Source: Mytilus trossulus
Taxonomy: Eukaryota
Length of the DNA: 64,000 bases
Assembly (NCBI RefSeq): GCF_036588685.1
Contig: NC_086380.1
Coordinates: forward strand, 58,156,001-58,220,000
Direction: 5' to 3'
Positions 1,256 through 64,000 of this stretch are shown one piece after another. The first letter of the stretch is position 1. Each line of letters starts with the position of its first letter. The notes under the pieces were generated by a model. That model saw nothing but the letters and a program-made list of their open reading frames with translations. It did no database searches and was not told the origin of the DNA. The position numbers and the translations under genes are program-made.

Positions 1256-1362
1256 TTTTGAATTTAACCGCGTAATGATACTTATCAGAAAGTACGTACA
1301 GGTCACGTGTCAAATCACTGCATTAGATCAAGGGATAGACATTTTCTGGATCTCAGGTAAAA
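1256..1362 (+). promoter_or_regulatory. Putative core promoter and non-coding exon 1 of copy 1 (intron 1357..5176)
   Basis: Module conserved once per gene; GGTCACGTG at 1301; tctcag|GTAAAA donor at 1357. Confidence 0.65.
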
Positions 1363-1497
1363 CAAAGTTGTGAAGAATACTTACAATAACATGATTGATA
1401 AGTAGTTGATTTGTTTCTTGCATATTGAATCAATTATTATCAGTTTTAATTTTCATATTGAATCGAAGTCAATAAAAAATCATTGACTTTAAAGTTT

Positions 1498-1511
1498 ACT
1501 TTCGTTTTCGC
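1498..1511 (-). promoter_or_regulatory. ISRE/IRF-E-like motif GAAAACGAAAGT (representative; also at 3926, 12295, 18671, 30963, 32111, 38511; variants at 39261, 48098, 58195)
   Basis: ACTTTCGTTTTC on + is GAAA-AC-GAAA-GT on -, matching the GAAANNGAAA IRF consensus; about 130-145 bp downstream of each exon-1 donor. Confidence 0.45.
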
Positions 1512-1949
1512 CTTGCATATAAGGTTAAAATATCCAAACATTAGGTATGTAAAAATTAGCACAAATAAATAAAAAAAAAGCAAAACCAAAAACATTTAGC
1601 ATTGACAATTAATTCTCTTTCTTTTTTATCTTATTCTAAATGAAAATTCGAAATTGTTAACATCACCAATAATATTTTGAGTACAAACAAGTATGCTAGC
1701 CTGACAAATATAAATACTTTGTATTGAATGAATGAATACTACATATGCTATAGCAACGAAAAACATATTTACAACATGACAAATGATAAACAGCAGAGAA
1801 CAATACTTATAAATCATTACAAGAAAGCAAATTTTATTAAGTAACAATATGTGATCTGATTGACCACGCAGATTTTATGTAGTTACACAATTTTTTAATA
1901 TGTAAAACAGACTTTGATTTAAATAGATACTGTAATTAAGTAATTTAAT

Positions 1950-2135
1950 AGTTTTTCCTTTTGAATGGTTTTACACTAGTAATTTTGGGGTCCTTTATAG
2001 CTTGTTGTTCAGTGTGAGCCAAGGCTCTATGTTGAAGGCCGTACATTGACTTATAATGGTTTACTTTTTTAAATTGTTATTTGGATGGAGAGTTGTCTCA
2101 TTGGCACTCACACAACATCTTCCTATACCTATTTG
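1950..2135 (+). repeat. SINE-like interspersed repeat 3' part (also ~30195-30392, ~31760-31950, ~51155-51345)
   Basis: Near-identical ~190-bp blocks (tttgaatggttttacactag...ggatggagagttgtctcattggcactcacaccacatcttcc) at four positions. Confidence 0.7.
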
Positions 2136-2187
2136 AACACAAACACATGCGATGAGCATATTTCAATACGTAACCGAAGGCTGTGTA

Positions 2188-3799
2188 TGAGACAATATCT
2201 GAAAAAGTCGATTTTCCATGTCCCCAACTTCACCAGCAATTATTTTTTTATTTAACCATCTTTTTTGAAAATTTCAAGTTTCAGTATAAACTAAATTATA
2301 TAATGCACCAACCCCTGACAATTAAACACTCATTCTTATATTTCTTCCAATAAAATATTGTAATTTAAATGTTCAACCCCCCTAAAATCATGTTGTCCCC
2401 TGTGTTTTTTGGAAAACTAAATCATTCAAATAATATCCAAATTTATTAAACAGGCGTCCGATTCTCACATATATGATAAATTATATAATAAACTTGCCCC
2501 TAATTTGTCTTTTTATATTATAACTAGAGCATGTAATAAAATTTTGCAAATTTTAAGAGAACAAAAATTTGTCCCCAGGGGTGATTTCCCTCCTGTTACC
2601 ACTAGGTCTTTTTTACCAGTGGAAACGTTTACAAGACCAAGAGTTATTTTCCCATTATGTATTTTGAAGAGCATCATTTTCTGAATGCATTAGTACAAAG
2701 AAATAGATGGAAAGGCGGCCAGGTTTGAAAATTCAAGCCCATCCAAGGTACGAATTTATAGGAAAATACTTTATGGTGTTCTATCCTGTTATAACCTTTT
2801 TTTACACTTTCTGAGAATAATTTTAAGTGTGCACCACAACATGAGGTGTGTTTTTATGTCATCTTTTTAAATGTTATATGTCACAGGAAATACACTTACA
2901 TTTAATGTGATAAAAAGTACAAAAACTATCGCGTAATTCCTTTCTGTTACGTTCTGTCATATTACCTGATAAAAAGTAACAGCATAACCATCATCAGTAA
3001 CAGGAAGGATGCTAAAGACAATTTCACTAAAGAATCAAAAAGTTTATCTACTATATGCCAACCATTTCATTTAATTTATGTTATCACCACCTTATCAAAT
3101 AAATTTCAAAATAATATACAGTATATTGAATAAATAAATAGGGTTTTTCCCTTTGATAACAGCAGAGAACATTGTGCAATTCTAGTATAGTAGATAGTAA
3201 CAGCAAGGAATTTATTTTAGAATTTTTCATTACCTAGGCAGATTTTTCATCTTGCAAATACAGTTTCAAAGGATAAATGACATTGTTTGCTGTTATCTTC
3301 CAATTGTGACCAATCTATAATGATGTTTTTTTCTTAAACTTTAAAATAAAGCAGAAAAATCCTTTCTGTTACCAACTCTATCCTGTTACCGTTGTCCTGT
3401 TACTCAAGACTCTTTCATGTTACCGACATATTTGACTATATTTAAGTATATTTCTAAACCTTTTGTATTGCAAATGCTAAAATCAATAATTGGCATTTGA
3501 TAAACTATTGCAGGATATACTAGTAAACCACAAATAATGTCTTAAACTTATTCCTTATTCCCATTAGAAACTTTTTAAAATTGGTTCACTTTGGTAACAG
3601 GAAAGAACTGGATTTTTTTTTTAACCATTTTTAAAATAGCCATTGTTTTCTTATTAAACAATTGTTTGAATTACAGACAACAGTTCCTAGATCTACAATG
3701 TGTGTTCTTCGATTCGTGCTATTAAAATACCGGGTCTAAAAAATTTTTTTTGGGTTTTTTCTCATTGCCAAAAAATCGACTTTTTCAGATATTGTCTCG
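2188..3799. mobile_element. Non-autonomous Tc1/mariner-type DNA transposon in the copy-1 intron
   Basis: 28-bp TIRs (T/C)GAGACAATATCTGAAAAAGTCGATTTT; TA duplication; empty site ctgtg-ta-tatgactgc present in the copy-4 intron at ~31980. Confidence 0.85.
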
Positions 3800-5177
3800 T
3801 ATATGACTGCAATGCTTTGAACACTAACACATGATTGATGAGTTCCTAGCATATGAAATTAATTATAATGAGTTTTAATTTTTCATATTTAATGCAAGTC
3901 AATAAAAACAATAACTTTGTATTCTACTTTCGTTTTCGCTTCGCATATAATGTTAAAATATTCAAACATTGGATATGTGAATAAAAAACACAGATTATTG
4001 ATAAAAATAAACCACGAAGTTTCACTTAATTTTTAAAATGTTTAAGGACCTTTAGATCTGCATATATCATCATTCACAATTACATTGTTAATTAAGAACA
4101 CTGATTATACAGTATGTATCTCCTATTCAATTTGATGTTTTACCAAATTCGAAATACTTTCATCCTTCAAAAAGTATGCACTCAGTAAATACAGAAAAAC
4201 AAAACAAGTAATGAATAAATTACAAACTTGAGATCACTTGAGTATTGTGTTGCGTGGTTGATATTTCATGCTTAACCATGTTTATAGTGGAAGGGTAAAC
4301 AAATACAATAGATATGTACATTCGCTATCAATGACAGGACATTTGAAATGTCACATGAACATGATAGTTTAGTAGAGGGATTGAAGTAACAGATTTGGTC
4401 TTGTAACAAGCCACCTAAAGTCCCTTCAGAGAGTTTTTGAAAGCGTTGAATAATGTGCCGAGAGCTTTACATTCGCCTTAACATAGTCATCAGATTTAGT
4501 GCACTCATTCAGACCGGCAGTTGTCAGTCGATGTAAATTTGTATTTATAAACACTCTAGTATTAACACTACACAGCCAAGCCTTAATAGTGAATGAGTTA
4601 TTAATTGAACGGGAGAGGCCATGGAATGATCATATTTTCATGCATAGTCAAACCCTTTTAGTATGCCTTTTGACCTTGCTTCTAATTGTACTTTTGTTGA
4701 TCTAAGACCCTTCTTGGTTTAATTCCGTGATAGTACGAACAAAGTTTTACTTGTTTCATAAGTAACAATATGTGTTGCATGACACTTGAAATGGCACAGT
4801 TCTATGCGAAATATCAATGTTATATTTATCTTGTCAAATTAACTTTTTTACCTGTATTTCTAAAATTATCGTGACAGTGAAGCAGAAACTTGTGTTCAAG
4901 AAAAAAAGGAGATTTTAAATGATAATTAAAAAAAACGCAACAATATTTTTTAGTCGACAGTATTACATGCAAATATGCAACCTAAGCACGCACATTGTGT
5001 GCCAAGAATAATTATGCTTACATGACTTGCGACAGCAAGACTTTATAGAACCTTTATTTTCATTTACATAATTAAGGTAACAACCGGTGAATGAAAAACA
5101 TATCTAATGATTTGTCTTACATAAGACAAATTTTGGTTAAAAGCAATTTTATTCTTTTGAAATTTCTTTTTTGTAGC

Positions 5178-6866
5178 ATGTCGAGTAAATTAACTGTATG
5201 TGGAGTATGTGATTATCAGAACATTAACAAACCATCAGTTGCCTGGTGTTCAGAATGTGACGAAGGACTTTGTGAAGAATGTAAAGTGCATCATGCAGCT
5301 TCAAAGGCGACCAGAAACCATAGCATTGTCCTACAATCCGATTTCCAAAATCTACCTTCTAATGTATTGGAAATTACTCAAACATGTCCAAAGCACGAAG
5401 AAAAATACCAGATATTTTGTAGGAAGCACGATTGTCCATGTTGTAGGCTATGTGTTGTTGAAACACACAACGATTGCAAAGATTTGAACGCGATAGAGGA
5501 TGTAATTAAGAATGTAAAATCTTCAAGTGCATTCTTAGAGATGGAACAATTATTGAAAGAACTTTCCGAAAATTTGCAGAATATAAGAAAAGATAGACAG
5601 AAAAACATTAAAAGTCTGACGGAGAACAAAACAATCATAGAAAAGGAAGTTCAGCAGGCACGAATATTGATTAATAATCATTTGGATAAAATACAGGAAA
5701 GTCTGATGAAAGAGCTTTTTACCGCAGAGGAAAAGGAAAAAAAGAAAATAAGCAATTTAATATCATCAATACAAGAGAAAGAAAAAGAGATTACAGACTA
5801 TCAAACTACTCTTGATAGAATAAAAAAGCATGCCTCAGACCTCCAGACATTTTTGGTTATGAAGCACATTCATCGAGATGTCACGAACAAAGAGCAATTT
5901 CTGGAATCTCTAATAAAAGAAGAGAAACTGAACCATATTTCAATAACTTGGAAAAACGAAAATATTACGGAGACCCTACCAACTACAATCAAGAAGATAG
6001 GAACCATAATATTAGAAACCAGGGCAGGTGAAGCAATATCAACAAGTAGGAAGTTAAAACAAGCACAGATAATGGCGCTTACTGCACCTATTCCTATTAT
6101 TGATGACATCAAACTTACTTTAGGACAAACCGTGAAAACAATTGGAAATGATATCAAAAGCTGTTGCTTATTAGCTGATGGAAGAATGATTTTTTCATGC
6201 TATCTCAGTTGCAAAATTCACGTGTTCAAAACCAGCGGGATTTTGGATTTTACACTTGAGACAGGATCCATGACATCTCATATCCACTTTATCGAACAAA
6301 GTCAAAAACTTGTCGTAACAACTGGGCCTTACAACCAATGCATTAAGATTATCGACATGAAAAACAGAAAAACTGAGAAATCTATTGTTGTTGGATCAGA
6401 GATTTATGGAATTGTTCATAAAGACGGACAATTGTTCTATAATGGATATCATGGTGGGTTGCGTGTTGTAAGTGTAGATGGCCAATTGAGTAAACGGTTG
6501 GTAAATGTTACTTTGAAACAAAATAGCAGCATTGCAATATGTTTACATCAACTTTATTATATAGGCGAAGATGATTCAATATCATGCTGTGATCTTGAAG
6601 GTGGTGTTAAATGGAAATTAGAGCAGAAACCATTCCTTTCAAACATACGAGGCATAACAGTGGACAATTACGGACGTGTTTACGTATCAGGATTTTGGTC
6701 TCACAATGTAGTCGTAATTTCACCAGATGGAAACAAACATCGATTACTGCTGTCAGAGAAGGATGGTCTTCAGAGTCCACAGTCTTTGTTCTTCGACCAA
6801 ATAAATAACAAATTACTTATTACAAATCAACAAACTAACGCATTTGTTTATGACGTTTCAAAATGA
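5178..6866 (+). CDS. RING-less TRIM-like protein (B-box1, B-box2, coiled coil, NHL-like propeller), copy 1, 562 aa
   Basis: ORF 5091..6866 trimmed to the conserved MSSK start, which follows a polypyrimidine tract and TAG acceptor (ttttttgtag c ATG). CGVC..WCSECDEGLCEEC..HH..H = B-box1; CPKH..FCRKHDCPCCRLC..H..C = B-box2; E/K/Q-rich heptads; RGITVDNYGRVYVS / PQSLFFD propeller repeats. Confidence 0.9.
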   Translation: MSSKLTVCGVCDYQNINKPSVAWCSECDEGLCEECKVHHAASKATRNHSIVLQSDFQNLPSNVLEITQTCPKHEEKYQIFCRKHDCPCCRLCVVETHNDCKDLNAIEDVIKNVKSSSAFLEMEQLLKELSENLQNIRKDRQKNIKSLTENKTIIEKEVQQARILINNHLDKIQESLMKELFTAEEKEKKKISNLISSIQEKEKEITDYQTTLDRIKKHASDLQTFLVMKHIHRDVTNKEQFLESLIKEEKLNHISITWKNENITETLPTTIKKIGTIILETRAGEAISTSRKLKQAQIMALTAPIPIIDDIKLTLGQTVKTIGNDIKSCCLLADGRMIFSCYLSCKIHVFKTSGILDFTLETGSMTSHIHFIEQSQKLVVTTGPYNQCIKIIDMKNRKTEKSIVVGSEIYGIVHKDGQLFYNGYHGGLRVVSVDGQLSKRLVNVTLKQNSSIAICLHQLYYIGEDDSISCCDLEGGVKWKLEQKPFLSNIRGITVDNYGRVYVSGFWSHNVVVISPDGNKHRLLLSEKDGLQSPQSLFFDQINNKLLITNQQTNAFVYDVSK

Positions 6867-12057: not shown

Positions 12058-12164
12058 TTTTGAATTTACCCGCGATATAATACTGATCAGGAGGTACATA
12101 CTGGTCACGTGTCAAATACCTGCATTGGATCAGTTGATAGACATTTTCTGGATCTCAGGTAAAA
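12058..12164 (+). promoter_or_regulatory. Putative core promoter and non-coding exon 1 of copy 2 (intron 12159..13596)
   Basis: GGTCACGTG at 12103, TCAGTT Inr-like, tctcag|GTAAAA at 12159. Confidence 0.65.
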
Positions 12165-13597: not shown

Positions 13598-15286
13598 ATG
13601 TCGAGTAATCTGACTGTGTGTGGAGTATGTGAATACCGAAACATCAGCAAACCTTCAGTGGTCTGGTGTTCAGAATGTGATGAAGGACTTTGTGAGGGAT
13701 GTAGAGAGCATCATGCTGCTTCGAAGGCGACTAGAATTCATAGTATTGTTCTACAATCCGATTACCAGAATTTACCTTCTGATATATTGAAAATCACCAA
13801 CACATGTTCAGAACACGATGAAAAATACGTTATATTTTGTAAGAAGCATGATAGTCCATGTTGTAGTCGATGTGTCGTTGAAACACATAACGATTGCAAA
13901 GATTTAAACGCGATAGATGACGTCATTAAGGATGTAAAATCTTCAAGTGCATTCTTAGAGATGGAACAAATGTTGACAGAACTTTCAGAAAATTTACAGA
14001 GAATAAGAAAAGATCGACAAGAAAACATTAAAATTTTACGAGAGAACAGGACAAACATAGAAAAAGAAGTCCAGCAGACAAGAAGCCTGATTAACAATCA
14101 TCTTGATAGGTTACAGGAAAATTTGATAAAAGAGTTGTATGACGTTGAGAAAAATGAAAACAAAATCATCACAAACATAATATCATTAATAGAAGAGAAA
14201 GAAAGAGAAATTATCAAAAGTCAAACTAATTTAGATAAAGTTAAAAAGCATGCATCAGACCTCCAGACGTTTCTGGCTTTGAAGCACATCCAACGAGATG
14301 TCAGTAACAACGAACAATTTATGGAATCGTTGATAAAGGAAGAGAAATTGAACAATGCATCTATTTCTTGGAAAAATGAAAATGCTTTAGAGATTTTACC
14401 TAACCAAATCAAGAAGATGGGAACCATAATTCTAGATACGAAGGCAGGTGAAGCAACATTAACAAACAGGAAAAACCAACAAGCTCAGATAATGCTGCCA
14501 AATACATATGTTCCTACCATTGATGATATAACACTTACTTTAAAACAGACCATGAAGACAATAGGAATTGATATCACAAGTTGCTGCTTGTATGATGGCA
14601 GGATGATTTTCTCCTGTTTTAATAGTGAACAAATTTACGTCCTGAAAACCAACGGGTCTTTAGATTTTACATTGAATCCTGGATCGCATACTTCGCATAT
14701 ATACTATATTGAAGAAAGCCAAAAACTCCTTGTAGCACCTGGTCATGACTTCACCTGCATTACAATTATTAACATGAAAAATAGAAAAACTGAGAAATCT
14801 ATTAAAGTTGGATCAGAGATTTATGGAATTGTTCACAAAGATGGAAATGTGTTCTATAATGGAGGCAGTCGTGGATTATGTGTTGTAGGTTTATATGACG
14901 ACGACTCTATAACACAGCTAGTTAACGTTAGATTGTCTACATATAGTAGCATTGTCATGTGGTCAGATAATCTTTACTTTATAACCTATGATGATACAGT
15001 ATCATGCTGTGATCTCCAAGGGACATTGAAATGGAAATTAGAGCAGAAAAATATTTTTACAAAGGCTCGAGGTATAACAGTGGACAATTATGGACGTGTT
15101 TACGTATCGTGCTATGGATCTAACATGGTCGTCGTTATTTCACCAGATGGAACCAAACACAGGGTGTTGCTGTCAAAGAAAGATGGTATTAAAAACCCAC
15201 AAGCTTTGTGCTTCGATCAAAAAAGTAACAAGTTACTTATTGCAAACAAATGCAATGACGCATTTCTTTATAACGTTTCAAAATGA
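13598..15286 (+). CDS. RING-less TRIM-like protein, copy 2, 562 aa
   Basis: Same architecture; ORF 13559..15286 trimmed to MSSN after ttttttgtag t ATG. Confidence 0.9.
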   Translation: MSSNLTVCGVCEYRNISKPSVVWCSECDEGLCEGCREHHAASKATRIHSIVLQSDYQNLPSDILKITNTCSEHDEKYVIFCKKHDSPCCSRCVVETHNDCKDLNAIDDVIKDVKSSSAFLEMEQMLTELSENLQRIRKDRQENIKILRENRTNIEKEVQQTRSLINNHLDRLQENLIKELYDVEKNENKIITNIISLIEEKEREIIKSQTNLDKVKKHASDLQTFLALKHIQRDVSNNEQFMESLIKEEKLNNASISWKNENALEILPNQIKKMGTIILDTKAGEATLTNRKNQQAQIMLPNTYVPTIDDITLTLKQTMKTIGIDITSCCLYDGRMIFSCFNSEQIYVLKTNGSLDFTLNPGSHTSHIYYIEESQKLLVAPGHDFTCITIINMKNRKTEKSIKVGSEIYGIVHKDGNVFYNGGSRGLCVVGLYDDDSITQLVNVRLSTYSSIVMWSDNLYFITYDDTVSCCDLQGTLKWKLEQKNIFTKARGITVDNYGRVYVSCYGSNMVVVISPDGTKHRVLLSKKDGIKNPQALCFDQKSNKLLIANKCNDAFLYNVSK

Positions 15287-18436: not shown

Positions 18437-18538
18437 TTTTGAATTTAATTGCGATATTTCACTTATCAAATAGTACGGACTGGTCACATGTGCAAATACC
18501 TGCATTGGATCAGTTAGACAATTTCAGATAAAGTAATG
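18437..18538 (+). promoter_or_regulatory. Degenerate promoter/exon-1 module of copy 3
   Basis: GGTCACATG at 18482; short deletion; donor position reads cag|ATAAAG (18528). Confidence 0.5.
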
Positions 18539-19976: not shown

Positions 19977-21662
19977 ATGTCGAGTAAATATACTGTTTGT
20001 GGAGTATGCAGTTATCAGCACATTAACAAGCCATCAGTGGTCTGGTGTTCGGAATGTGACGAAGGACTTTGTGAAGAATGTAAAGTGCATCATACAGCTT
20101 CAAAGGCGACCAGAGACCATAGTATTGTACTACGATCCGTCTACCATAATTTACCTTCTATTATATTGGAAATCACTCAAACTTGTCCAAAGCACGAAGA
20201 AAAATACGTTATATTTTGTAAGAAGCATGATATTCCATGTTGTAGTCGATGTGTTGTTGAAACACATAACGATTGCAAAGATTTAAACGCGATAAATGAC
20301 GTCATTAAGAATGTAAAATCGTCAAGTGCATTCTTAGAGATGGAACAAGTGTTGAAAGAACTTTCAGAAAATTTGCAGAGAGTAAGAAAAGATCGAGAAG
20401 TAAACACTGAAAGTCTAAGGGAGAACATAACAAACATAAAAAAAGAAGTTCAGCATACACGAGTATTGATTAACAATCATTTGGATAAGATACAGGAAAG
20501 TCTGATGAAAGAGCTGTTTTCGGCCAAGGAAAATGAAAACAAGAAAATAAGCAATTTAATATCATCAATACAAGAGAAAGAAAAAGAGATAACAGAATTT
20601 CGAACCACTCTAGATAAAATAAAACAGCATGCTTCAGACCTGCAAACATTTTTAGCTTTGAAACACATCCAACAAGATGTCAGGAGCAACGAACAATTTC
20701 TGGAATCTTTAATAAAAGACGAGAAAATAAAACATGTGTCCATTTCTTTGAGAAACGAAACATCTGTTGAGAACCTATTTACCACTATGAAGAAGATGGG
20801 AACCATTGTCTTGGAAACCAAGTCACGTGATGCAACATTAACAAACCGTAAGCATCAACAAGCACAGATACTGATGCCTGCTACACCCGTTCCTACTATT
20901 GATGATATAAAACTTACTTTGAGACAGACTGTAAAAACTATTGGAACATATATCTCTTGTTGCTTCTTACTTCCTGATGGCAGAATGATTTTTTCCTGCT
21001 GCACAAGCGGACACATAAGCGTACTAAAAAGTGACGGGACTTTGGATTTTACATTAAGGACTGAACAACGTACATCTCATATATTCTTCATTGAGGAAAG
21101 CCAAAAGCTTGTCGTAACATCAGGCAATGCTTACTGCATTCAAATGATCGATATGAAAACCAGAATAACTGAGAAATCGATTGATGTTGGATTACGGAAT
21201 TATGGAATAGCTCACAAAGATGGGAAATTGATTTATAATGGCTATTACGATGGATTAAACGTTGTAAATTTAGATAACAACTCTGTTTCCCAGTTAGTAA
21301 AAGTTTCATTATCAAAATATGCCAGCATTGCAATTTGGTCAGATAATCTTTATTTCATTAACAATGATGATTCAGTAACATGTTGTGATATCCAAGGGAC
21401 CTTGAAATGGAAATTAGGACCTGTAGCTGTTCTTAAGACGGCACGAGGTATTACAGTAGACACTTTTGGGCGTGTTTACGTATCAGGCTATACAACTTCC
21501 AATGTCGTCGTAATTTCACCAGATGGAAAGGTCCACAAATTATTGCTGTCAGAGAAGGATGGTTTGGAACATCCGCAAGCTGTTTGCTTTGATCGAACAA
21601 ATAACCAGTTACTAATTGCGAACCATCGAAATGACGCATTTATTTATGACGTTTCAAAATAA
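19977..21662 (+). CDS. RING-less TRIM-like protein, copy 3, 561 aa
   Basis: Same architecture; ORF 19890..21662 trimmed to MSSK after tttttgtag c ATG. Confidence 0.88.
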   Translation: MSSKYTVCGVCSYQHINKPSVVWCSECDEGLCEECKVHHTASKATRDHSIVLRSVYHNLPSIILEITQTCPKHEEKYVIFCKKHDIPCCSRCVVETHNDCKDLNAINDVIKNVKSSSAFLEMEQVLKELSENLQRVRKDREVNTESLRENITNIKKEVQHTRVLINNHLDKIQESLMKELFSAKENENKKISNLISSIQEKEKEITEFRTTLDKIKQHASDLQTFLALKHIQQDVRSNEQFLESLIKDEKIKHVSISLRNETSVENLFTTMKKMGTIVLETKSRDATLTNRKHQQAQILMPATPVPTIDDIKLTLRQTVKTIGTYISCCFLLPDGRMIFSCCTSGHISVLKSDGTLDFTLRTEQRTSHIFFIEESQKLVVTSGNAYCIQMIDMKTRITEKSIDVGLRNYGIAHKDGKLIYNGYYDGLNVVNLDNNSVSQLVKVSLSKYASIAIWSDNLYFINNDDSVTCCDIQGTLKWKLGPVAVLKTARGITVDTFGRVYVSGYTTSNVVVISPDGKVHKLLLSEKDGLEHPQAVCFDRTNNQLLIANHRNDAFIYDVSK

Positions 21663-30725: not shown

Positions 30726-30832
30726 TTTTGAATTTAACCGCGATATTATACTTATCAGGAAGTACGTACTGGTCACGTGTGCCAATAACTGCATTGGATC
30801 AGAGATAGACATTTTCTGGAGTTCAGGTAAAG
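30726..30832 (+). promoter_or_regulatory. Putative core promoter and non-coding exon 1 of copy 4 (intron 30827..32792)
   Basis: GGTCACGTG at 30771, gttcag|GTAAAG at 30827. Confidence 0.65.
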
Positions 30833-38278: not shown

Positions 38279-38385
38279 CTTGAATTTAACCGCGTTTTAA
38301 TACTTATCAGAAAGTACGTACTGATCACGTGTGCAAATACTTACATTAGATCAGGCGATAGACATTTTCTGGATCTCAGGTAAAG
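38279..38385 (+). promoter_or_regulatory. Putative core promoter and non-coding exon 1 of copy 5 (intron 38380..41237)
   Basis: GATCACGTG at 38323, tctcag|GTAAAG at 38380. Confidence 0.65.
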
Positions 38386-41238: not shown

Positions 41239-42927
41239 ATGTCGAGTAAATATACTGTTTGTGGAGTATGCAACTATCAGAACATTAACACACCATCAGT
41301 GGTCTGGTGTTCGGAATGTGACGAAGGACTTTGTGAAAAATGTAAAGTGCACCATACAGCTTCAAAAGGGTCGAGAAACCATAGTATCGTTCAAATCTCG
41401 GAGTACCAGAAGCTTCCTTCCAATTTATTGGAAATTACTCAAACATGTTCAAAACATGATGAAAAATACCAAATATTTTGTAAGAAACATGATATTCCAT
41501 GTTGTAGACGATGCGTTATTGAAACACATAACGATTGCAAAGATTTAAACGCGATAGAGGATGTCATTAAGAATGTAAAATCTTCAAGTGCATTTTTAGA
41601 GATGGAACACGTGTTGAAAGAACTTTCAGAAAATTTGCAGAGAATAAGAATAGATAGACAAGAAAACATTAAAAGTCTAACTGAGAACAGGACAAAAATC
41701 GAAAAAGAAGTTCAGCAGACACGAAGCCTGATTGACAATCATCTGAATAGGCTACAAGAAAAATTGATTAAAGAGTTGTATGACGTTGAGGAAAAGGAAA
41801 ACGAAAGCATCACAAACTTAATAACATTAATCAAAGAGAAAGAAAGAGAAATTATCGAATGTCAAACTACTTTAGATAAAGTAAAACAACATGCATCTGA
41901 CCTCCAGTCGTTTTTGGCTATAAAACACATCCAACGCGATGTCACGATCAACCAACGATTTCTGGAATCGTTGATAAAAGAAAAGAAAATGAACCATGCA
42001 TTTATTTCTTGGAAAAACGAAAATGCTTTGGACATCTTCCCTGTCCAAACCAAGAAGATGGGCACCATAATATTAGATACCAGGTCAGTAGATACAATAT
42101 TAACCAACAGAAAGAACAAACAAGCACAGATAAAAGTGCCTACTACACATGTTCCTACCATTAATGATATCAAACTTACTTTAAAACAGACGGTGAAAAC
42201 ACACGGACAAGATATCACAGATTGCTCCTTACTTCCTGATGGCAGAATGATTTTTCCCTGCAGTACTCGTCAACAAATCCACGTACTGAAAACCGACGGG
42301 TCATTAGATTTTACATTGAATTCAGAATTCCGTATATCGCATATATACTTTATCGAGGAAAGTCAAAAACTTGTCGTAACAACTGGGATGATCCCCAAGT
42401 GTGTTATGGTTATTAATATGAAGAGTAGAAACACAGAGAAATCGATTGAAGTTGAATCAGAGATTTATGGAATAGTTCATAAAGATGGAGAATTGTTCTA
42501 TAATGGATATAAAAGAGGATTATGTGTTGTAAGTTTAGATGACGACTCTGATACCCAGTTAGTAAAAGTTTCCTTGGCTCGCTATAGCAACATTGCAATA
42601 TGGTCAGAACAACTTTATTTTATATGTAATGATGATTCAGTAACATGCTGTGATCTTAAAGGGACATTGAAATGGAAATTAGAGCAGAAAACATTTCTCA
42701 CAAGCGCACGAGGTATAACAGTGGACAATTACGGACGTGTTTACGTATCAGGATTTGCATCTAACAATGTCGTCGTGATTCCACCGGATGGAAACAAACA
42801 CAGAGTGTTGCTGTCAGAAAAAGATGTTCTTATAAAACCACAGTCTCTTTTCTTCGATCGAAAAAATAACAAGCTACTAATTACAAATCAACGCAATGAA
42901 GCATTTCTTTATGACGTCTCAAACTGA
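41239..42927 (+). CDS. RING-less TRIM-like protein, copy 5, 562 aa
   Basis: Intact ORF starting MSSK after ttttttgcag c ATG; same domains. Confidence 0.9.
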   Translation: MSSKYTVCGVCNYQNINTPSVVWCSECDEGLCEKCKVHHTASKGSRNHSIVQISEYQKLPSNLLEITQTCSKHDEKYQIFCKKHDIPCCRRCVIETHNDCKDLNAIEDVIKNVKSSSAFLEMEHVLKELSENLQRIRIDRQENIKSLTENRTKIEKEVQQTRSLIDNHLNRLQEKLIKELYDVEEKENESITNLITLIKEKEREIIECQTTLDKVKQHASDLQSFLAIKHIQRDVTINQRFLESLIKEKKMNHAFISWKNENALDIFPVQTKKMGTIILDTRSVDTILTNRKNKQAQIKVPTTHVPTINDIKLTLKQTVKTHGQDITDCSLLPDGRMIFPCSTRQQIHVLKTDGSLDFTLNSEFRISHIYFIEESQKLVVTTGMIPKCVMVINMKSRNTEKSIEVESEIYGIVHKDGELFYNGYKRGLCVVSLDDDSDTQLVKVSLARYSNIAIWSEQLYFICNDDSVTCCDLKGTLKWKLEQKTFLTSARGITVDNYGRVYVSGFASNNVVVIPPDGNKHRVLLSEKDVLIKPQSLFFDRKNNKLLITNQRNEAFLYDVSN

Positions 42928-43289
42928 ATTAATACACTATTCTTGAGATGGGCTGTTTTAGTATGTTTTATCAACGATTAACGTTGAACTGTTCTCTGTG
43001 TGTTCTTATAAATGAAACATGTGAAATACGGTACAAATTTGGTATGTTCTAATTACATTTGTAATCGCAACAATTATTTTTATATAAACATAAAAACTTA
43101 CGCTAATTGTGGACTAGTCATTAGTGTTGATTTGATTGAAAATGTTATGAAAAATGTTTTAAAGTGATTGACAGTTCAAAAGGCTTTCAGGACGACCACA
43201 ACACGTTTCCTCTCTTACTGCATATTTGTTCCTAACCATTTATAAATGATAGTTTATAACATGTTATGTTTATGGTAATGCATTATTGA

Positions 43290-47858: not shown

Positions 47859-47966
47859 TTTTGAATTTAACCGCGATATTATACTCATCAGAAAGTATGT
47901 ACTGGTCACGTGTGCAAATATCTGCATTGGATCAATTGATAGACATTTTCTGGATCTCAGGTAAAA
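47859..47966 (+). promoter_or_regulatory. Putative core promoter and non-coding exon 1 of copy 6 (intron 47961..48885)
   Basis: GGTCACGTG at 47904, tctcag|GTAAAA at 47961. Confidence 0.62.
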
Positions 47967-48886: not shown

Positions 48887-50574
48887 ATGTCGAGTAGATT
48901 AACTGTATGTGGTGTATGCGACTACCGCAACATTAGACAACTATCAGTGTGTTGGTGTTCAGAATGCGACGAAGGACTTTGTGAGGGGTGTAAAGATCAT
49001 CATGCAGCTTCAGAGGGGACCAGAGATCATGGTATTGTTTAATCTCTGAGTACCAGAAGCTTCCTACCAATATATTGGAAATTACTCAGACATGTCCAAA
49101 ACACAGTGAAAAATACGTTATATTCTGTAAGAAACATGATATTCCATGTTGTAGACGATGCGTTGTTGAAACACATAACGATTGCAAAGATTTGAACACG
49201 ATAGAGGATGTCATTAAGAATGTAAAATCATCAAATGCATTTTCAGAGATGGAACAAGTGTTGAAAGAACTTTCAGGAAATTTGCAGAATGTAAGAAAAG
49301 ATAGACAAGAAAACATTCAAAGTATAAGGGAGAATAGAACACAAATAAAAAAAGTTCAGCAGACACGAAGCCTGATTAACAATCATCTAGATAAACTGCA
49401 GGAAATTTTGATAAATTTTAAAGAGTTGTATGACGTTGAGGAAAAGGAAAACAAAAGCATCATAAACATAATATCATCAATAGAAGAGAAAGAAAGAGAA
49501 ATCACCGAAAGCCAAACTGTTTTAGATAAAGTGAAACAACACCCATCAGACCTCCAAACGTTTCTGGCTATGAAACATATCCAACGAGATGTCACAATCA
49601 ACGAACAATTTCTGGAATCGTTGATGAAAGAAGAGAAAATCAACAATGCATCTATTTCTTGGAAAAACGAAAATGCTGTGGAGATTTTATCTAACCAAAT
49701 CAAGAAGATTGGAACCATCATATTAGATACCAGGCCAGGTGATACGATATTGACAAGCAGGAAGAAGCAACAAGCACAGATAGTGCAACCTACATCACCT
49801 GTTCCTTCCATTGATGATATAAAACTTACTTTACGAAGGACCGTGAAAACATTTAGAGGTGATATCACTAGTTGCTGCTTTCTTCCTGATGGCAGAATGT
49901 TTTTTTCCTGTTACGCTAATGATCAAATCCACGTCTTGAAAACCGACGGATCATTAGATTTTACATTGAAGCCGGGATCGAAAACATCTCATATAGATTT
50001 TATCGAGAATAGTCAAACACTTGTCGTAACATCTGGCTGTGTCTACAATCACATTAAGATTATCAATGTGATAAACAGAAAAACCGAGAAATCTATTGCT
50101 GTTGGAACACAGATTTATGGAATAGTTCACAAAGATGAAAATTTTTTTTACAATGGGGAAAGTCGTGGATTACATGTTGTAAATTTAGATGATGGCTCTG
50201 ATACCCAGTTAGCAGACGTTTCCTTAACTCTCTGTAGCAGCATAACAACATGGTCAGATCAACTTTATTTTATAAACGCGGAGTCAGTAACATGCTGTGA
50301 CCTCCAAGGGACATTGAAATGGAAATTAGAACTTAACACTTTTCTTACAAACGCAATGGGTATAGCAGTGGACAATTATGGACGTGTTTACGTTTCGGGT
50401 TTTGAATCCAACAATGTTGTCGTGATTTCAACAGATGGAAGCAAACATAGAGTTTTGCTGTCAGGGAAAGATGGCCTTAAAAGACCACAGTCTGTGTGCT
50501 TCGATCGAAAAAACAACAACCTTCTTATTGCAAATCAACAGAATGACGCGTTTATTTATGACGTTTTAAAATGA
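48887..50574 (+). pseudogene. Frameshifted TRIM-like copy 6
   Basis: ATG at 48887 (MSSRLTVCGVCDY...) reads 51 codons to TAA at 49040-49042. gtttaatctctgagtac is 1 nt shorter than paralog gttcaaatctcggagtac. The rest continues in another frame (ORF 49075..50574). Confidence 0.85.
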
Positions 50575-57958: not shown

Positions 57959-58065
57959 TTTTGAATTTACCGCGGTATTATACTTAGGAGAAAGTATGTA
58001 CCGGTCACGTGTGCACATACCAACAAAAGATCAGTTGATAGACATATTCTGGATATCAGGTAAAG
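57959..58065 (+). promoter_or_regulatory. Putative core promoter and non-coding exon 1 of copy 7 (intron 58060..60390)
   Basis: GGTCACGTG at 58003, TCAGTT, tatcag|GTAAAG at 58060. Confidence 0.65.
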
Positions 58066-58217
58066 CGATGTTTTGAATACTTGCAATGGCATACTTGATA
58101 ATTAGTTGATTTTTTCTTGCATATTGAATCAGTTATTATATCTTTTCATTTTCATATCTAATGCAAGTCAATAAAAACAATGACTATAAATTCTACTTTC
58201 GTTATCGCATTGCATAC

Positions 58218-60391: not shown

Positions 60392-62080
60392 ATGTCGAGT
60401 AAATATACTGTTTGTGGAGTATGCGATTATCAGCACATTAACAAACCATCAGTGGTCTGGTGTTCAGAATGTGACGAAGGACTTTGTGAAGAATGTAAAG
60501 TGCATCATGCAGCTTCAAAGGGGACCAGACACCATAGTATCGTTCAAATCTCGGAATACCAGAAGCTTCCTTCCAATTTATTAGAAATTACTCAAACATG
60601 TTCAAAACACGATAAAAAATACGTTATATTTTGTAATAAGCATGATAGTCCGTGCTGTAATCGATGTATTGTTGAAACCCATTACGATTGCAAAGATTTA
60701 AACGCGATAGATGACGTCATTAAGAATGTAAAATCTTCAAGTGCATTCTTAGAGATGGAACAAATGTTTACAGAACTTTCAGAAAATTTGCAAAGAATAC
60801 GAAAAGATCGACATGAAAACATTGAAAGCCTAAAGGAGAAAAGATCCAAAATAGAAAAAGAAGTTCAGCAAACGCGAATCCTGATTGACAAACATCTGGA
60901 TAAGTTGCAGGAAAGTCTGATAAAAGAGTTGTATGACACTGAGGAAAAGGAAAGCACAAAAATTAAAAACATAATATCATCCATTCAAGAAAATGAAAGA
61001 AAGGTAACCGAAGGCAAAACTACTTTAGATACAATAAAACAACATGCATCAGACCTCCAGACGTTTCTGGCAATGACACATATCCAGCAAGAAGTGAGAA
61101 ACAACGAACACTTTCTGGAATCCTTGATAAAGGAAAGGAAAATGAACAATGTTTCCATTACTTGGAAACACGAAACTGCCTTGGAAATCTTCCCTGTCCA
61201 AATCAAGAAGATGGGAACCATAATATTAGATACGACGGCAGGTGAAGTAACATTAATTAACAGGAAGAACCAACAAGCACAGATAAAGCTGCCTATGGTT
61301 CATGTCCCTACCATTGATGATATAAAACTTACTTTAAGACATACAGTGAAAACAACTGGAAAAGATATCACAGATTGCTGCTTTCTTCCCGATGGCAGGA
61401 TGATTTTTTCCTGTTACATTACTCAACTAATTTACGTCATTAAAACTGACCGATCATTAGATTTTACATTAACACCAGGATCGCGTACTTCACATATATA
61501 CTATATTGAAGAAAGCCAAAATCTCGCTGTATCATCTGGTCATAACCCCACTTGCATTACAATTATTAATATGAAAAATAGAAAAACTGAGAAATCTATT
61601 AGAGTTGGATCAGAGATATATGGAATAGTTCACAAAGATGGAAAATTGTATTATAATGGATATAATAAAGGATTATGCGTTGTATGCTTAGATGACGCCT
61701 CTATAACACAGCTAGTAAACGTTACCTTGAATCGATATAGCAGCATTGCAATATGTTCAGATCAACTTTATTTTATAGGCGAAGATGACTCAGTAGCATG
61801 CTGTGCTCTTAAAGGGACATTGAAATGGAAAGTAGAACTTAATACTATTCTTAAAACAGTACAAGGTATTACAGTAGACAACTATGGGCATGTTTACGTA
61901 TCGGGCTATGAATCTAACAAGGTCGTTGTGGTTTCACCAGATGGAAACAAACACAGATTGCTGCTGTCAGAGAATTGTGGTCTTAAAAATCCACAACCTT
62001 TGTACTTTGATCGAAAAAATAACAAGCTACTCATTGCAAACAAATGCAAAGGCGCATTTATTTATGACGTTTCAAAATGA
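60392..62080 (+). CDS. RING-less TRIM-like protein, copy 7, 562 aa
   Basis: Intact ORF starting MSSK after ttttttgcag c ATG; same domains. Confidence 0.9.
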   Translation: MSSKYTVCGVCDYQHINKPSVVWCSECDEGLCEECKVHHAASKGTRHHSIVQISEYQKLPSNLLEITQTCSKHDKKYVIFCNKHDSPCCNRCIVETHYDCKDLNAIDDVIKNVKSSSAFLEMEQMFTELSENLQRIRKDRHENIESLKEKRSKIEKEVQQTRILIDKHLDKLQESLIKELYDTEEKESTKIKNIISSIQENERKVTEGKTTLDTIKQHASDLQTFLAMTHIQQEVRNNEHFLESLIKERKMNNVSITWKHETALEIFPVQIKKMGTIILDTTAGEVTLINRKNQQAQIKLPMVHVPTIDDIKLTLRHTVKTTGKDITDCCFLPDGRMIFSCYITQLIYVIKTDRSLDFTLTPGSRTSHIYYIEESQNLAVSSGHNPTCITIINMKNRKTEKSIRVGSEIYGIVHKDGKLYYNGYNKGLCVVCLDDASITQLVNVTLNRYSSIAICSDQLYFIGEDDSVACCALKGTLKWKVELNTILKTVQGITVDNYGHVYVSGYESNKVVVVSPDGNKHRLLLSENCGLKNPQPLYFDRKNNKLLIANKCKGAFIYDVSK

Positions 62081-62859
62081 ATTAAGACACTGGCTCTGAG
62101 GTGAGCTTATCTGTAAAAAATATGCGTGTGCTAAAAAAAGTTGGACTGTGCTCTTTGAGTTCTTATAAATGTAACATATCAAAAACTATACAGATGTATT
62201 ATGTAATCACAACATTTGTTATCATACAATTATTCTTTCCCCAAAGTATTAAACATGAACAATATACGCTAATTGCACATCCAAAGAAAGGACTTGCCAT
62301 TTGTGATGATATGATTAAAAATGATAAAAAAAATATGAATTTGTGTTTTAAAAACAGGTGATTGTTAATCCAATAGATACAAACACAATCATGTCCTCGA
62401 GTGCAAGTCTAACTTATCCCTTGTATTGCAGTTAATTATTCCAAAGCAGTTACGAATAAAAGTTAAGAGCAGCATAGGTTATAATAGTAAGAATTAACAA
62501 TGAGACACATATTTAAACGACTGTTTTTATGTAAATAATCCATTTTTTTTCACATATAAAATTGTATCCATCTTAATACATTTTTTTTAATCGAACTTAA
62601 TTTATGTATGCTCTTCTTCCGAGAGGGTAAGCGATTTAGAACCAGGTTTAATCCACCATTTTCTACATTTGAAAATGCCTGTACCAAGTCAGGAATATGA
62701 CAGTTCTTGTCCATTCCTTTTTGATGTGTTTTGTCATTTGATTTTGCCATTTGATTATGGACCTTCCTGGGAGTTCAGTTTTTGTGATTTTACTTTTTTT
62801 ACCCTAACCACAAATGTTATTTTGAGTACAGACAAATATGTCAACATGTAAAATGTTAA

Positions 62860-63190
62860 GGTGAGGTTAGGTGCATCAAGGTGAGGTTAGGTGAAAATTA
62901 ATAAATTAAGAATTTGGAATTGATACTAAAAGCTGGAAGAGCATTCTTTAAGGATAAAACTAAGCTAAAGATATTAAAATGTCATCTCCTTTGGGATATA
63001 TCAGATTTAAAATATGGCGGGAAAAAGCTGAATATGAAGTTTACCTTATATTTGCATTGGTATTATTTAAGTCTCAAAAAAACCAAAGAAAATTAAGCAT
63101 CTTATAAATTTTTTGTGAATGAACTTTGATGAGCTATTAATACTTCTATGAAAAAATAAATGGGGTGTTATGGAGCACCTAAGTACATCC
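62860..63190. mobile_element. Possible TTAA-flanked MITE
   Basis: TTAA on both sides; imperfect TIR (ttaggtgc / gcacctaa); interrupts aaaatgtta..gatcttaaga seen in paralogous introns. Confidence 0.45.
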
Positions 63191-63204
63191 TTAATTAGAT
63201 CTTA

Positions 63205-64000
63205 AGAGTAGCATATACAATCATTATTTGACAATTATAAATTCATTGTGTTACATTGATGTATGTATCTCCTACAGCGTTTATACTAGTACTTGAATAT
63301 TGTGGAGCTTAACCATGTTTACAATAAATAAGTTCTTTAAGATTGGCTAATCGCTATCAAGGGCCGGACATTTGAAATGACGCAACTAGGAACATGCTAT
63401 GAGTGATTGGGGTGACTGATTTGGTGTTATAACAGGCCACATATAGTTTTTTTCAGAGAGTTTTTTTAATAACTTGCTGATAACTTAAAATTCGTCTTAT
63501 AGGTCCCTTATTTCGACCTGAAGTTGTCAGTGGACAATTTTTTTTCAAACACTCATGTATGCCCTTTGAACTTGCTTCAAAATGTACTTTTGAGATTTTT
63601 AACATGTTTTATCCCGTGATAATACCAAAAAATGTAAACTTGAATCATAAGTTATGATATTCGTAGGTTACACTTAAAAAGAACAGTCCATGTGAAATAT
63701 AGGCGATACAGATTTATCTTGTAATAAGAATAACTTACGTTTTTATGACAAAATATTGTAGGAGGAACGACCGTTAAGGAAATTACAGTGGATTTTCAAT
63801 GACGATAAATTAAAGCCCGCCAAAAGAATTTCCTAGTTGGCATAACTACCCATATCACCTGATAGTTTTAAACAAACAGAGAAAATATCAGTGACACGGA
63901 AAAACATGCTTTCTCACACATTTTGTGCAAAGCATATAAGCTTACATGACTGGCATCAACAAGATTTCATAGAACCTTTATTTGCATTTACTTAATTAGA
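63205..64000 (+). repeat. Near-identical duplicate of the copy-7 intron 3' half (~59350-60230); probable lead-in to an eighth gene copy beyond the window
   Basis: Long colinear identity with a few deletions; ends at the gaacctttatttgcatttac motif that lies roughly 110-200 bp before the ATG in copies 1, 2, 4 and 7. Confidence 0.8.

What the first reader, a model, noticed from the sequence alone, without database searches (positions are those of the whole stretch)
1256..64000. Tandem array of at least 7 RING-less B-box/coiled-coil/propeller genes: a candidate diversified innate-immune receptor locus
Seen: seven same-strand paralogs of 561-562 aa, each a self-contained unit of promoter module, intron and single coding exon. 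The B-box region is near-invariant (WCSECDEGLC, ETHNDCKDLNAI.DVIK.VKSSSAF) while the C-terminal propeller diverges. No RING is encoded. Known: TRIM-NHL proteins use B-box/coiled-coil for oligomerisation and the propeller for ligand (often RNA) binding, and TRIM-like families are expanded in bivalves. Inference: a constant oligomerisation scaffold with a variable recognition head, possibly forming hetero-oligomers or acting as substrate adaptors for a RING partner in trans.
Basis: partly seen in the sequence, partly recalled or inferred. Interest (0 to 1): 0.8.

Follow-up and report, generated by a model that had tools for sequence, protein, structure and literature searches.

The report
Mussel RING-less B-box/NHL gene array
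A mussel chromosome carries a tandem row of Brat-like genes (two B-boxes, coiled coil, six-bladed NHL propeller, no RING) whose scaffold is conserved. The loops on one face of the propeller are driven apart by positive selection, the signature of a variable binding repertoire, possibly for defence.

Summary
The array is real. The window (Mytilus trossulus, contig C8:58,156,001-58,220,000) holds seven same-strand paralogs. Six are intact (561-562 aa). One (c6) carries a 1-nt deletion. A promoterless, frameshifted eighth copy starts at 62,644.

Each protein has B-box1, B-box2, a roughly 130-residue coiled-coil hairpin and a six-bladed NHL propeller (VIA Z 29 to Thin, TRIM2 and LIN-41). No RING is found in any frame.

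The variable-head idea holds up:
- A codon site-class test finds about 8% of propeller codons at omega about 3.3 (LRT 78, p 1e-17).
- All 12 sites with posterior above 0.95 lie in every second loop, so on one face.
- The N-terminal 270 residues show no such class (LRT 1.1).

Contigs of two runs that the tool only guesses to be RNA cover only the c5 coding exon and 3' region, which fits transcription. The predicted 5' mini-exon was not seen.

The immune role, hetero-oligomers and a trans RING partner remain untested.

The family is huge: at least 77 matches were scored out of 2,545 first-look candidates in this genome. Its members are already auto-annotated as TRIM71/TRIM2-like. This scan reached the same reading on two other arrays of this genome (s1-820603, s1-820631).

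Verdict: a new variant of a known kind, of moderate interest.

The parts
1258..1356 (+). Unit 1 upstream module: conserved box TTGAATTTAACCGCG, E-box CACGTG at 1304, predicted non-coding mini-exon ending at 1356 (donor CAG|GTAAAA)
   Evidence: splice not seen in RNA
1357..5176 (+). Unit 1 predicted intron (3820 nt); ISRE-like CTTTCGTTTTC at 1499 and in a duplicated segment at 3927
5178..6866 (+). c1 coding exon, 562 aa, intact
12060..12158 (+). Unit 2 upstream module / predicted mini-exon (donor CAG|GTAAAA); intron 12159-13596
13598..15286 (+). c2 coding exon, 562 aa, intact
18440..18527 (+). Unit 3 upstream module, degenerate: E-box CACATG, donor CAG|ATAAAG; predicted intron 18528-19975
19977..21662 (+). 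c3 coding exon, 561 aa, intact
30728..30826 (+). Unit 4 upstream module / predicted mini-exon; intron 30827-32792 with ISRE-like motif at 30964 and 32112
32794..34479 (+). c4 coding exon, 561 aa, intact
38280..38379 (+). Unit 5 upstream module / predicted mini-exon; intron 38380-41237 holding a 169-bp x4 high-copy tandem repeat (39489-40161)
41239..42927 (+). c5 coding exon, 562 aa, intact. Covered together with its 3' region to beyond 43500 by near-identical contigs of two runs that the tool guesses to be RNA
47861..47960 (+). Unit 6 upstream module / predicted mini-exon; intron 47961-48885
48887..50574 (+). c6: the same gene with a 1-nt deletion near 49040 (codon ~52) that gives a premature stop; otherwise open. 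A young pseudogene or an assembly error
57961..58059 (+). Unit 7 upstream module / predicted mini-exon; intron 58060-60390
60392..62080 (+). c7 coding exon, 562 aa, intact
62644..64000 (+). Start of copy 8. It is a 91%-identical partial duplicate of unit 7 that begins inside the intron and has no upstream module. Its ATG lies 160 nt beyond the window and it is frameshifted at codon ~398

Best explanation
This is one block of a birth-and-death tandem array. The array belongs to a very large, mollusc-expanded family of RING-less, Brat-type TRIM-like proteins.

Shown:
- Each copy is B-box1 + B-box2 (all 16 Zn ligands kept) + a long coiled-coil hairpin + a disordered linker + a six-bladed NHL propeller.
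- The scaffold evolves under purifying selection.
- About 8% of propeller codons evolve at omega about 3. They all lie in every second loop (D-A and B-C), so on one face of the propeller.
- Copies are born by unequal duplication and die by frameshift (c6, copy 8, one degraded fragment).
- At least c5 appears to be transcribed.

Inferred:
- The proteins dimerise through the TRIM-type antiparallel coiled coil. Each paralog then presents propellers with a different binding face.
- The array therefore acts as a germline-encoded repertoire of intracellular binders for fast-changing ligands. The most likely ligands are proteins (or nucleic acids) of viruses, other pathogens or mobile elements.
- Lacking a RING, the proteins would act by sequestration or higher-order assembly, or by bringing the bound target to an E3 supplied in trans.
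- Transcription probably starts at a conserved module with an E-box and a ~60-70-nt non-coding mini-exon. An invariant ISRE/IRF-like element ~140 nt into the intron may make it inducible.
For: - Architecture: Pfam ANCHR-like_BBOX and zf-B_box above cut-off; 16 invariant Cys/His across 87 homologues. The AF2 model has pLDDT 80.6, with the propeller above 90, helices 117-218 and 221-247, and 287-304 disordered. PDB sequence match to the KAP1/TRIM28 RBCC, E 1.8e-8, over residues 11-193.
- NHL fold: Foldseek TMt 0.73-0.75 to TRIM2 NHL. VIA Z 29.3 to Thin, 29.2 to TRIM2, 29.0 to LIN-41 and 26.6 to Brat, rmsd 2.1-2.9 A over 245-250 residues.
- Selection by region: NG86 dN/dS is 0.16-0.25 for the B-boxes, 0.22-0.27 for the coiled coil and 0.39-0.40 for the propeller. 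Within the propeller, D-A/B-C loops give 0.80, against 0.28 for the other loops and 0.29 for strands.
- Site classes: M2a vs M1a LRT 78.2 (p 1e-17), p2 0.084, omega2 3.25. Sites 324, 343, 345, 365, 384, 386, 425, 448, 464, 507, 533 and 552 are all in D-A/B-C loops.
- Controls: N-terminal 1-270 LRT 1.08. Both propeller halves are significant with their own trees. The local 8 copies alone give LRT 31.6, against 0.48 for the N-terminus. Eight independent pairs give 0.90 vs 0.37, Fisher p 3.5e-8.
- Birth and death.
- Expression: contigs of runs X1 and X2 (labelled 'RNA?', a guess by the tool) match at 99-100% and lie only on 41303-43500+. None lies on unique intron or upstream DNA.
- Regulatory module.
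Against: - No functional, induction or ligand data exist for these genes.
- The 5' mini-exon and its splice were not seen in the laid contigs, and the runs are only guessed to be RNA.
- The codon test is my own implementation, with NEB posteriors, branch lengths fixed up to one scale factor, and 16 sequences.
- Domain trees are incongruent, and conversion tracts exist among relatives. This can inflate site tests, although the split-half and independent-pair controls agree.
- 'Top face' rests on strand order from a predicted model, not on coordinates.
- Overall propeller dN/dS is below 1.
- The family is so large that many members may have non-defence roles.
Confidence: 0.6

Rival explanations
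1. Diversified post-transcriptional regulators. Like Brat, LIN-41 and Mei-P26, the propellers bind RNA motifs. On this reading the array is a set of mRNA or transposon-RNA repressors (germline, development or genome defence), not pathogen sensors.
For: The closest folds are RNA-binding NHL domains, namely LIN-41 and Brat RNA complexes (Z 29.0 and 26.7). The RING-less B-box1/B-box2/CC/NHL architecture equals that of Brat. In those proteins the RNA-binding face is the top face (established knowledge), which is the face under selection here.
Against: Net charge of the selected-face loops is -5 to +2 and differs between copies, unlike the basic top face of Brat and LIN-41. Positive selection on a binding face is more typical of conflict than of housekeeping regulation. 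Identity to those NHL domains is only 9-14%.
Confidence: 0.2
2. Substrate adaptors or regulators of RING-bearing TRIMs. The copies hetero-oligomerise through the conserved coiled coil and B-boxes with RING-containing relatives and lend them variable specificity, or they act as dominant-negative decoys.
For: The coiled coil and B-boxes are conserved. Related mollusc clusters exist in which 40% of members carry zf-C3HC4 (rank 25). RING-less TRIMs that work with partners are known (established knowledge: TRIM14, 16, 29, 44).
Against: No RING gene lies in the window or in 40 kb of flanks. No interaction data exist. All 120 closest homologues are RING-less, so any partner would be a distant relative whose coiled coil need not pair with these.
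Confidence: 0.15
3. No adaptive repertoire. The propeller loops simply drift under relaxed constraint after duplication, and the omega>1 class is an artefact of recombination or gene conversion and of a small data set.
For: Incongruent domain trees. Conversion tracts of 313-484 nt among 67-68 Mb relatives. Pseudogenes in the array. Mean dN/dS of the selected-face loops is 0.8-0.9, not above 1.
Against: M1a already allows a neutral class, and M2a is better by 39 lnL units. The signal is repeated in both propeller halves with their own trees and in the local subset. The same method finds nothing in the N-terminal part. All 12 strong sites fall in 70 of 251 residues, on one face; that is about 2e-7 by chance (my arithmetic). 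Some independent pairs reach 1.1-1.8.
Confidence: 0.1
4. A conflict other than infection. The variable face could serve self/non-self or reproductive recognition in mussels, for example transmissible-cancer or allorecognition barriers, or handling of sperm mitochondria under doubly uniparental inheritance.
For: Only the generic signature of diversifying selection in a tandem array. Mytilus has these unusual biological conflicts (established knowledge).
Against: The proteins have no signal peptide or membrane segment in the model and so are cytosolic or nuclear. No tissue data are available. The intronic ISRE-like motif points rather to IRF-type control.
Confidence: 0.05

Closest known systems
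Drosophila Brain tumor (Brat), the RING-less member of the TRIM-NHL group
   Same: Same domain order: B-box1, B-box2, coiled coil and a six-bladed NHL propeller, with no RING. The propeller superposes on Brat NHL with Z 26.6, rmsd 2.9 A over 250 residues.
   Different: Brat is a single-copy, conserved developmental regulator that binds RNA through a basic top face. Here there are tens to thousands of paralogs in tandem arrays. One face is under positive selection and is not uniformly basic. NHL identity is only ~9%. Orthology was not tested.
TRIM-NHL E3 ligases TRIM2/TRIM3, TRIM32/Thin, TRIM71/LIN-41
   Same: These are the best structural matches of the propeller (Z 28-29, rmsd 1.9-2.3 A), with B-box/coiled-coil homology. 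NCBI names many Mytilus relatives 'TRIM71-like', 'TRIM2-like' or 'wech-like'.
   Different: The mussel genes have no RING and no filamin/Ig domain between coiled coil and NHL. Pfam NHL scores stay just below the cut-off (16.5-19 vs 20 bits). They form a lineage-specific expansion.
Fish finTRIM / primate TRIM5alpha type of diversified TRIMs (established knowledge, not tested here)
   Same: The logic is the same: a conserved RBCC scaffold, tandem lineage-specific expansion, and positive selection concentrated in surface loops of the C-terminal recognition domain.
   Different: Those proteins use a B30.2/PRY-SPRY head and keep the RING. Here the head is an NHL propeller and the RING is absent. 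Antiviral activity is shown for TRIM5alpha and not for these genes.
RING-less vertebrate TRIMs (TRIM14, TRIM16, TRIM29, TRIM44; PMC8720877 for TRIM29)
   Same: B-box/coiled-coil proteins that act without their own RING, several of them in innate immune signalling.
   Different: They have different C-terminal domains, are single genes, and form no diversified arrays.

Membership tests
TRIM / RBCC (tripartite motif) family | N-terminal RING finger | tested here: not met
   No RING Pfam hit in any copy. No C3HC4/C3H2C3 pattern in six frames of the window and L001-L004. No RING Pfam domain in the 120 closest homologues. The ATG lies 1 nt after a splice acceptor, and the predicted upstream exon is only ~60-70 nt.
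TRIM / RBCC (tripartite motif) family | B-box zinc-binding domain(s) with conserved Cys/His ligands | tested here: met
   PF22586 (27-32 bits, cut-off 27) at 7-49 and PF00643 (25-31 bits, cut-off 24.1) at 68-98. C8 C11 C24 C27 C32 C35 H39 H48 and C70 H73 C81 H84 C89 C92 H97 C100 are invariant in 87 sequences.
TRIM / RBCC (tripartite motif) family | Coiled coil directly after the B-boxes | tested here: met
   Predicted helices 117-218 and 221-247. phmmer match to the KAP1/TRIM28 RBCC structure 6h3a over residues 11-193, E 1.8e-8. Dimerisation itself was not tested.
TRIM-NHL group (class VII, with Brat as RING-less member) | C-terminal six-bladed NHL-repeat beta-propeller | tested here: met
   Six four-stranded blades at 312-562, pLDDT above 90. 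VIA Z 26-29 to NHL domains of Thin, TRIM2, TRIM3, TRIM71, LIN-41 and Brat. The Pfam NHL sequence score is sub-threshold.
TRIM-NHL group (class VII, with Brat as RING-less member) | Filamin/Ig domain between coiled coil and NHL (TRIM2/3/45/71 only) | tested here: not met
   Only two short low-confidence strands (253-260, 275-282) and a disordered linker 287-304. No filamin Pfam hit.
TRIM-NHL group (class VII, with Brat as RING-less member) | RNA binding by a basic top face of the propeller | tested here: inconclusive
   Net charge of D-A/B-C loop residues is -5 to +2 among 16 copies. This is a crude count from sequence; no electrostatics and no binding assay.
Diversified innate-immune receptor families (finTRIM / TRIM5-like logic) | Lineage-specific tandem expansion with birth and death | tested here: met
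   At least 77 matches scored of 2,545 candidates in the genome. About 22 subfamily members lie in clusters on C8. Pseudogenes c6, copy 8 and a degraded fragment.
Diversified innate-immune receptor families (finTRIM / TRIM5-like logic) | Positive selection focused on the ligand-binding surface | tested here: met
   M2a vs M1a LRT 78.2. Twelve sites have P>0.95, all on one face. Controls are negative for the scaffold.
Diversified innate-immune receptor families (finTRIM / TRIM5-like logic) | Induction by infection, or demonstrated restriction or recognition of a pathogen | not testable with these tools
   The only hints are a conserved ISRE-like motif in the intron and basal transcription of c5. 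'TRIM56'-named contigs rise after poly I:C in M. galloprovincialis hemocytes (PMC7773633), but their identity with this family is unknown.
Diversified innate-immune receptor families (finTRIM / TRIM5-like logic) | Copy-number or presence/absence polymorphism between individuals | not tested
No population data were examined.

The most novel reading that the evidence does not exclude
Mussels, and probably molluscs at large, run a germline-encoded intracellular recognition repertoire of hundreds of genes. It is built on a RING-less B-box/coiled-coil scaffold that carries an NHL propeller, and one face of that propeller is hypervariable. This would be an NHL-based counterpart of TRIM5/finTRIM or of plant NLR arrays, switched on through an IRF/ISRE-type element. 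It would be a class of invertebrate immune receptor that has not been characterised.
Probability: 0.3. Interest if true: 0.8.

Novelty: new variant of a known kind. Interest (0 to 1): 0.55.

Why it matters
Bivalves resist many pathogens without adaptive immunity, and their genomes are full of expanded, unexplained gene families.

These RING-less B-box/NHL genes are now filed as 'TRIM71-like' or 'uncharacterized'. If they are a variable binding repertoire, they would add a new structural solution (NHL propeller instead of SPRY, LRR or Ig) to the list of diversified innate receptors.

They would also give concrete handles for study: about 16 selected positions on one propeller face, and a conserved promoter/ISRE-like module. 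These could be used in work on mussel disease resistance, aquaculture breeding and the evolution of TRIM-based defence.

If instead they are RNA regulators, they would be the largest known radiation of Brat/LIN-41-type proteins.

Tried and rejected
- RNA proof of the two-exon structure. The one reads call showed contigs only on the coding exon and 3' region of c5, and no joint from the upstream module. The mini-exon therefore stays inferred.
- The look-up of encoding contigs, to read annotated gene ranges.
- iqtree2 -asr for a counting-type site test. I did no ancestral reconstruction by any other means. Instead I used pairwise NG86 counts and a site-class likelihood that sums over internal states and outputs no sequences.
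- A GENECONV-like run test. It is confounded by conserved blocks such as codons 93-107, so I treat conversion among the window copies as only weakly shown. Tracts among L007/L012 and L009/L010 are clear.
- Pfam scan of ten intergenic ORFs of 92-199 aa: no hits.
- Seven literature searches and reads of six papers. I found no dedicated description of this family. There is only a B-box orthogroup listed as expanded in bivalves (PMC8382680), and nothing in the main text of the M. galloprovincialis pan-genome paper (PMC7653742).
- I considered and rejected a hidden RING exon and a filamin domain.
- The large representative-protein search was not used, because the family was already clear.
- The gene model was searched by its single coding exon only.

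Full report
WHAT IS THERE

The window is G000:C8:58,156,001-58,220,000. It lies on an 80.7-Mb contig that the protein database links to Mytilus trossulus. It is AT-rich (30-35% GC) and has no N runs.

An ORF scan gives seven long same-strand ORFs of one family. Six are intact genes of 561-562 aa starting MSS(K/N): c1 5178-6866, c2 13598-15286, c3 19977-21662, c4 32794-34479, c5 41239-42927 and c7 60392-62080.

The seventh, c6, starts at 48887. It has a single 1-nt deletion near 49040 (AAA to AA, codon ~52) that gives a stop after 51 residues. The other ~510 codons remain open. It is a very young pseudogene or an assembly error, and I could not tell which.

An eighth copy begins at 62644. It is a 91%-identical duplicate of unit 7, but only from inside the intron onwards. 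It therefore has no upstream module, and it is frameshifted at codon ~398. A badly degraded fragment follows 5.5-6.8 kb beyond the window end.

Further subfamily members lie at 58,240,637 (+, intact) and 58,121,546 (-, intact), and in clusters at 64.4, 67.6-67.8 and 68.2-68.5 Mb of the same contig. One more, with a stop, lies on contig C2.

Genome-wide, the first look found 2,545 candidates, of which 77 were scored, all at E below 1e-120. The family is very large.

GENE STRUCTURE

Every ATG is preceded by a textbook acceptor, TTTTTTG(T/C)AG|(C/T)ATG. Between 0.98 and 3.9 kb upstream, each unit has one conserved module. Its parts, in order, are:
- a box TTGAATTTAACCGCG
- an AT-rich stretch
- GGTCACGTGTGC, which contains an E-box
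- about 50 nt ending in CAG|GTAAA(A/G), a good donor

The module is as conserved as the coding sequence (79-86% against ~80%), whereas the rest of the intron is at 65-73%. It is also present, at ~68% identity, upstream of the minus-strand copy L004 and of the C2 pseudogene L014.

The best-conserved intronic block is CTACTTTCGTTTTCG, ~140 nt after the donor. Its reverse complement, GAAAACGAAAG, resembles an ISRE/IRF site. The core occurs 13 times in the window against 0.34 expected.

Unit 3 has a degenerate module (CACATG, donor CAG|AT).

The two-exon model is thus well supported by sequence, but it was not seen in RNA. In the one reads call, contigs of two runs from different studies lie at 99-100% identity on 41303-43500+ only. 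The tool labels these runs 'RNA?' as a guess; they hold 60-88 Mb of contigs. Examples are a 774-nt contig with 0 differences and a 1205-nt contig that runs past 43500. Nothing lies on the unique intron or on the upstream module, and no joint from the module was reported. I read this as transcription of c5 with a 3' UTR of at least 570 nt. The 5' end is unresolved.

I searched the gene by its single coding exon only.

THE PROTEIN

Pfam finds ANCHR-like_BBOX (residues 7-49) and zf-B_box (68-98) above their cut-offs, only sub-threshold NHL/SGL/SBBP hits at the C-terminus, and no RING.

In an alignment of 87 Mytilus homologues, the eight ligands of B-box1 and the eight of B-box2 are invariant.

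AlphaFold2 with that alignment gives mean pLDDT 80.6:
- two small zinc-finger folds
- a helix 117-218 that folds back on 221-247
- a disordered linker 287-304
- a six-bladed propeller 312-562 at pLDDT above 90

The N-terminal part matches the KAP1/TRIM28 RBCC structure by sequence (E 1.8e-8). The propeller matches NHL domains best: Foldseek TMt 0.73-0.75 to TRIM2, and VIA Z 29.3 to Thin, 29.2 to TRIM2, 29.0 to LIN-41 and 26.6 to Brat, rmsd 2.1-2.9 A over ~245-250 residues.

There is no filamin domain. No RING-like Cys/His pattern exists in any frame of the window or of 40 kb of flanking DNA. None of the 120 listed homologues, all ~560 aa, carries a RING Pfam domain. The architecture is that of Drosophila Brat.

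IS THE HEAD VARIABLE BY SELECTION?

Amino-acid identity among the six intact copies is 81% in the B-boxes, 70% in the coiled coil and 64% in the propeller.

Synonymous divergence is similar along the gene (dS 0.43-0.62). The B-box conservation is therefore purifying selection (dN/dS 0.20-0.25) rather than homogenisation.

I added ten intact subfamily copies from the same genome and assigned loops from the strand order of the model. Blade 5 is anchored by the NHL motif GITVD..G.VYV. The D-A and B-C loops (70 residues) have dN/dS 0.80, against 0.28 for the A-B/C-D loops and 0.29 for strands. These loops hold 23 of the 36 most variable positions.

A site-class codon likelihood (my own implementation of M1a/M2a, with branch lengths from an ML tree and one scale factor) gives the following.

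| Data set | LRT (M2a vs M1a) | p |
|---|---|---|
| Propeller, 16 copies | 78.2 | 1e-17 |
| Blades 1-3, own tree | 48.8 | 2.5e-11 |
| Blades 4-6, own tree | 39.0 | 3.4e-9 |
| Propeller, 8 local copies | 31.6 | 1.4e-7 |
| N-terminal 1-270, 16 copies | 1.08 | 0.58 |
| N-terminal 1-270, 8 local copies | 0.48 | 0.78 |

For the 16-copy propeller test, 8.4% of codons sit at omega 3.25. The 12 sites with posterior above 0.95 are 324, 343, 345, 365, 384, 386, 425, 448, 464, 507, 533 and 552 (c5 numbering). All of them lie in D-A or B-C loops. They recur about every 20 residues, in every second loop, so they lie on one face whatever it is called. By the usual propeller convention this is the top face, which Brat and LIN-41 use to bind RNA (established knowledge).

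Eight phylogenetically independent pairs give dN/dS 0.90 on that face against 0.37 elsewhere (Fisher p 3.5e-8), with single pairs up to 1.8.

Caveats:
- The domain trees are incongruent with high support: N part c1+c3 and c4+c7; C part c2+c7, c3+L004 and c1/c4.
- Clear conversion tracts exist among the 67-68 Mb relatives: 484 nt for L007/L012 and 313 nt for L009/L010.
- Recombination can inflate such tests.
- My run test for conversion among the window copies is confounded by conserved blocks.

WHAT IT MOST LIKELY DOES

Shown: a conserved oligomerisation-type scaffold, one hypervariable positively selected propeller face, tandem birth and death, and apparent transcription of at least one copy.

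Inferred:
- Antiparallel coiled-coil dimers display paralog-specific binding faces to fast-evolving intracellular ligands. Pathogens or mobile elements are the most plausible source.
- Without a RING, the action would be by sequestration, by assembly, or by an E3 recruited in trans.

The selected-face loops are not uniformly basic (net charge -5 to +2). I therefore lean towards protein ligands rather than RNA, but only weakly.

The conserved ISRE-like element fits inducible, IRF-type control, though it is only a motif. The rivals are listed with odds in the Rival explanations section: RNA regulators, adaptors for RING TRIMs, drift plus artefact, and other conflicts.

COMPARISON AND NOVELTY

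These genes are not canonical TRIMs, because the RING test fails. They share architecture with Brat and fold with TRIM-NHL propellers. Their evolutionary logic matches finTRIM/TRIM5alpha, with NHL in place of SPRY.

Public annotation already holds hundreds of Mytilus relatives named 'TRIM71-like', 'TRIM2-like', 'wech-like' or 'uncharacterized'. The ESM Atlas shows many mollusc B-box+NHL clusters, including one related cluster with RING in 40% of members. A B-box orthogroup is listed as expanded in bivalves (PMC8382680).

I found no paper in the held library that describes selection on the NHL face of this family. The main text of the mussel pan-genome paper does not mention the family.

The scan itself reached the same reading on two other arrays ~18 Mb away in this genome (s1-820603 and s1-820631).

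VERDICT

The 'constant scaffold, variable head' reading is supported by my tests. The immune role, hetero-oligomers and a trans RING partner remain hypotheses. I class this as a new variant of a known kind, with interest 0.55.

Noticed in passing
window 39489-40161 (intron of unit 5): A 169-bp unit repeated 4 times (90% match). Contigs of all four laid runs pile up on 39288-40207 at summed depths of 3,000-50,000, with many joints and loose ends. It belongs to a very abundant repeat family (satellite or MITE-like) of the mussel genome or transcriptome.
   Followed up: partly
window 1499, 3927, 12296, 18672, 30964, 32112, 38512, 48099, 58196 (+ strand): An ISRE/IRF-like core CTTTCGTT(T/A)TC lies ~140 nt into the predicted intron of every unit, with second copies in duplicated intron segments of units 1 and 4. 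There are 13 matches against 0.34 expected. It is also kept in the 68%-identical modules of L004 and L014.
   Followed up: partly
window 18485-18533 (unit 3): Unit 3 keeps an intact 561-aa ORF, but its upstream module has CACATG instead of the E-box, an 11-nt deletion, and CAG|AT instead of the GT donor. c3 and c7 were also not among the proteins on record in the database. This may be regulatory decay ahead of coding decay.
   Followed up: no
L005-L012 (C8:67.68-68.29 Mb): The sister cluster of the same subfamily has no recognisable copy of the upstream module within 4 kb of the ATG, so it may use a different 5' exon or a longer intron. Within it, the N-terminal halves of L007/L012 and L009/L010 are almost identical while the propellers differ by ~15%. 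This points to gene conversion or segment exchange that spares the propeller.
   Followed up: partly
L005:3-2537: Two long ORFs (364 and 480 aa, + strand) lie just upstream of the paralog in L005. They were not examined and may be a mobile element.
   Followed up: no
window 45510-46106 (-) and 44778-45209 (-): ORFs of 199 and 144 aa lie between units 5 and 6, with no Pfam hit. Their nature is unknown.
   Followed up: partly
window 40760-40943: A short stretch of the unit 5 intron has low but consistent contig depth (8-20) in all four runs, while the surrounding intron has none. It is probably another dispersed repeat. The same segment (40920-41037) recurs at 59797-59906 and 63557-63665.
   Followed up: no
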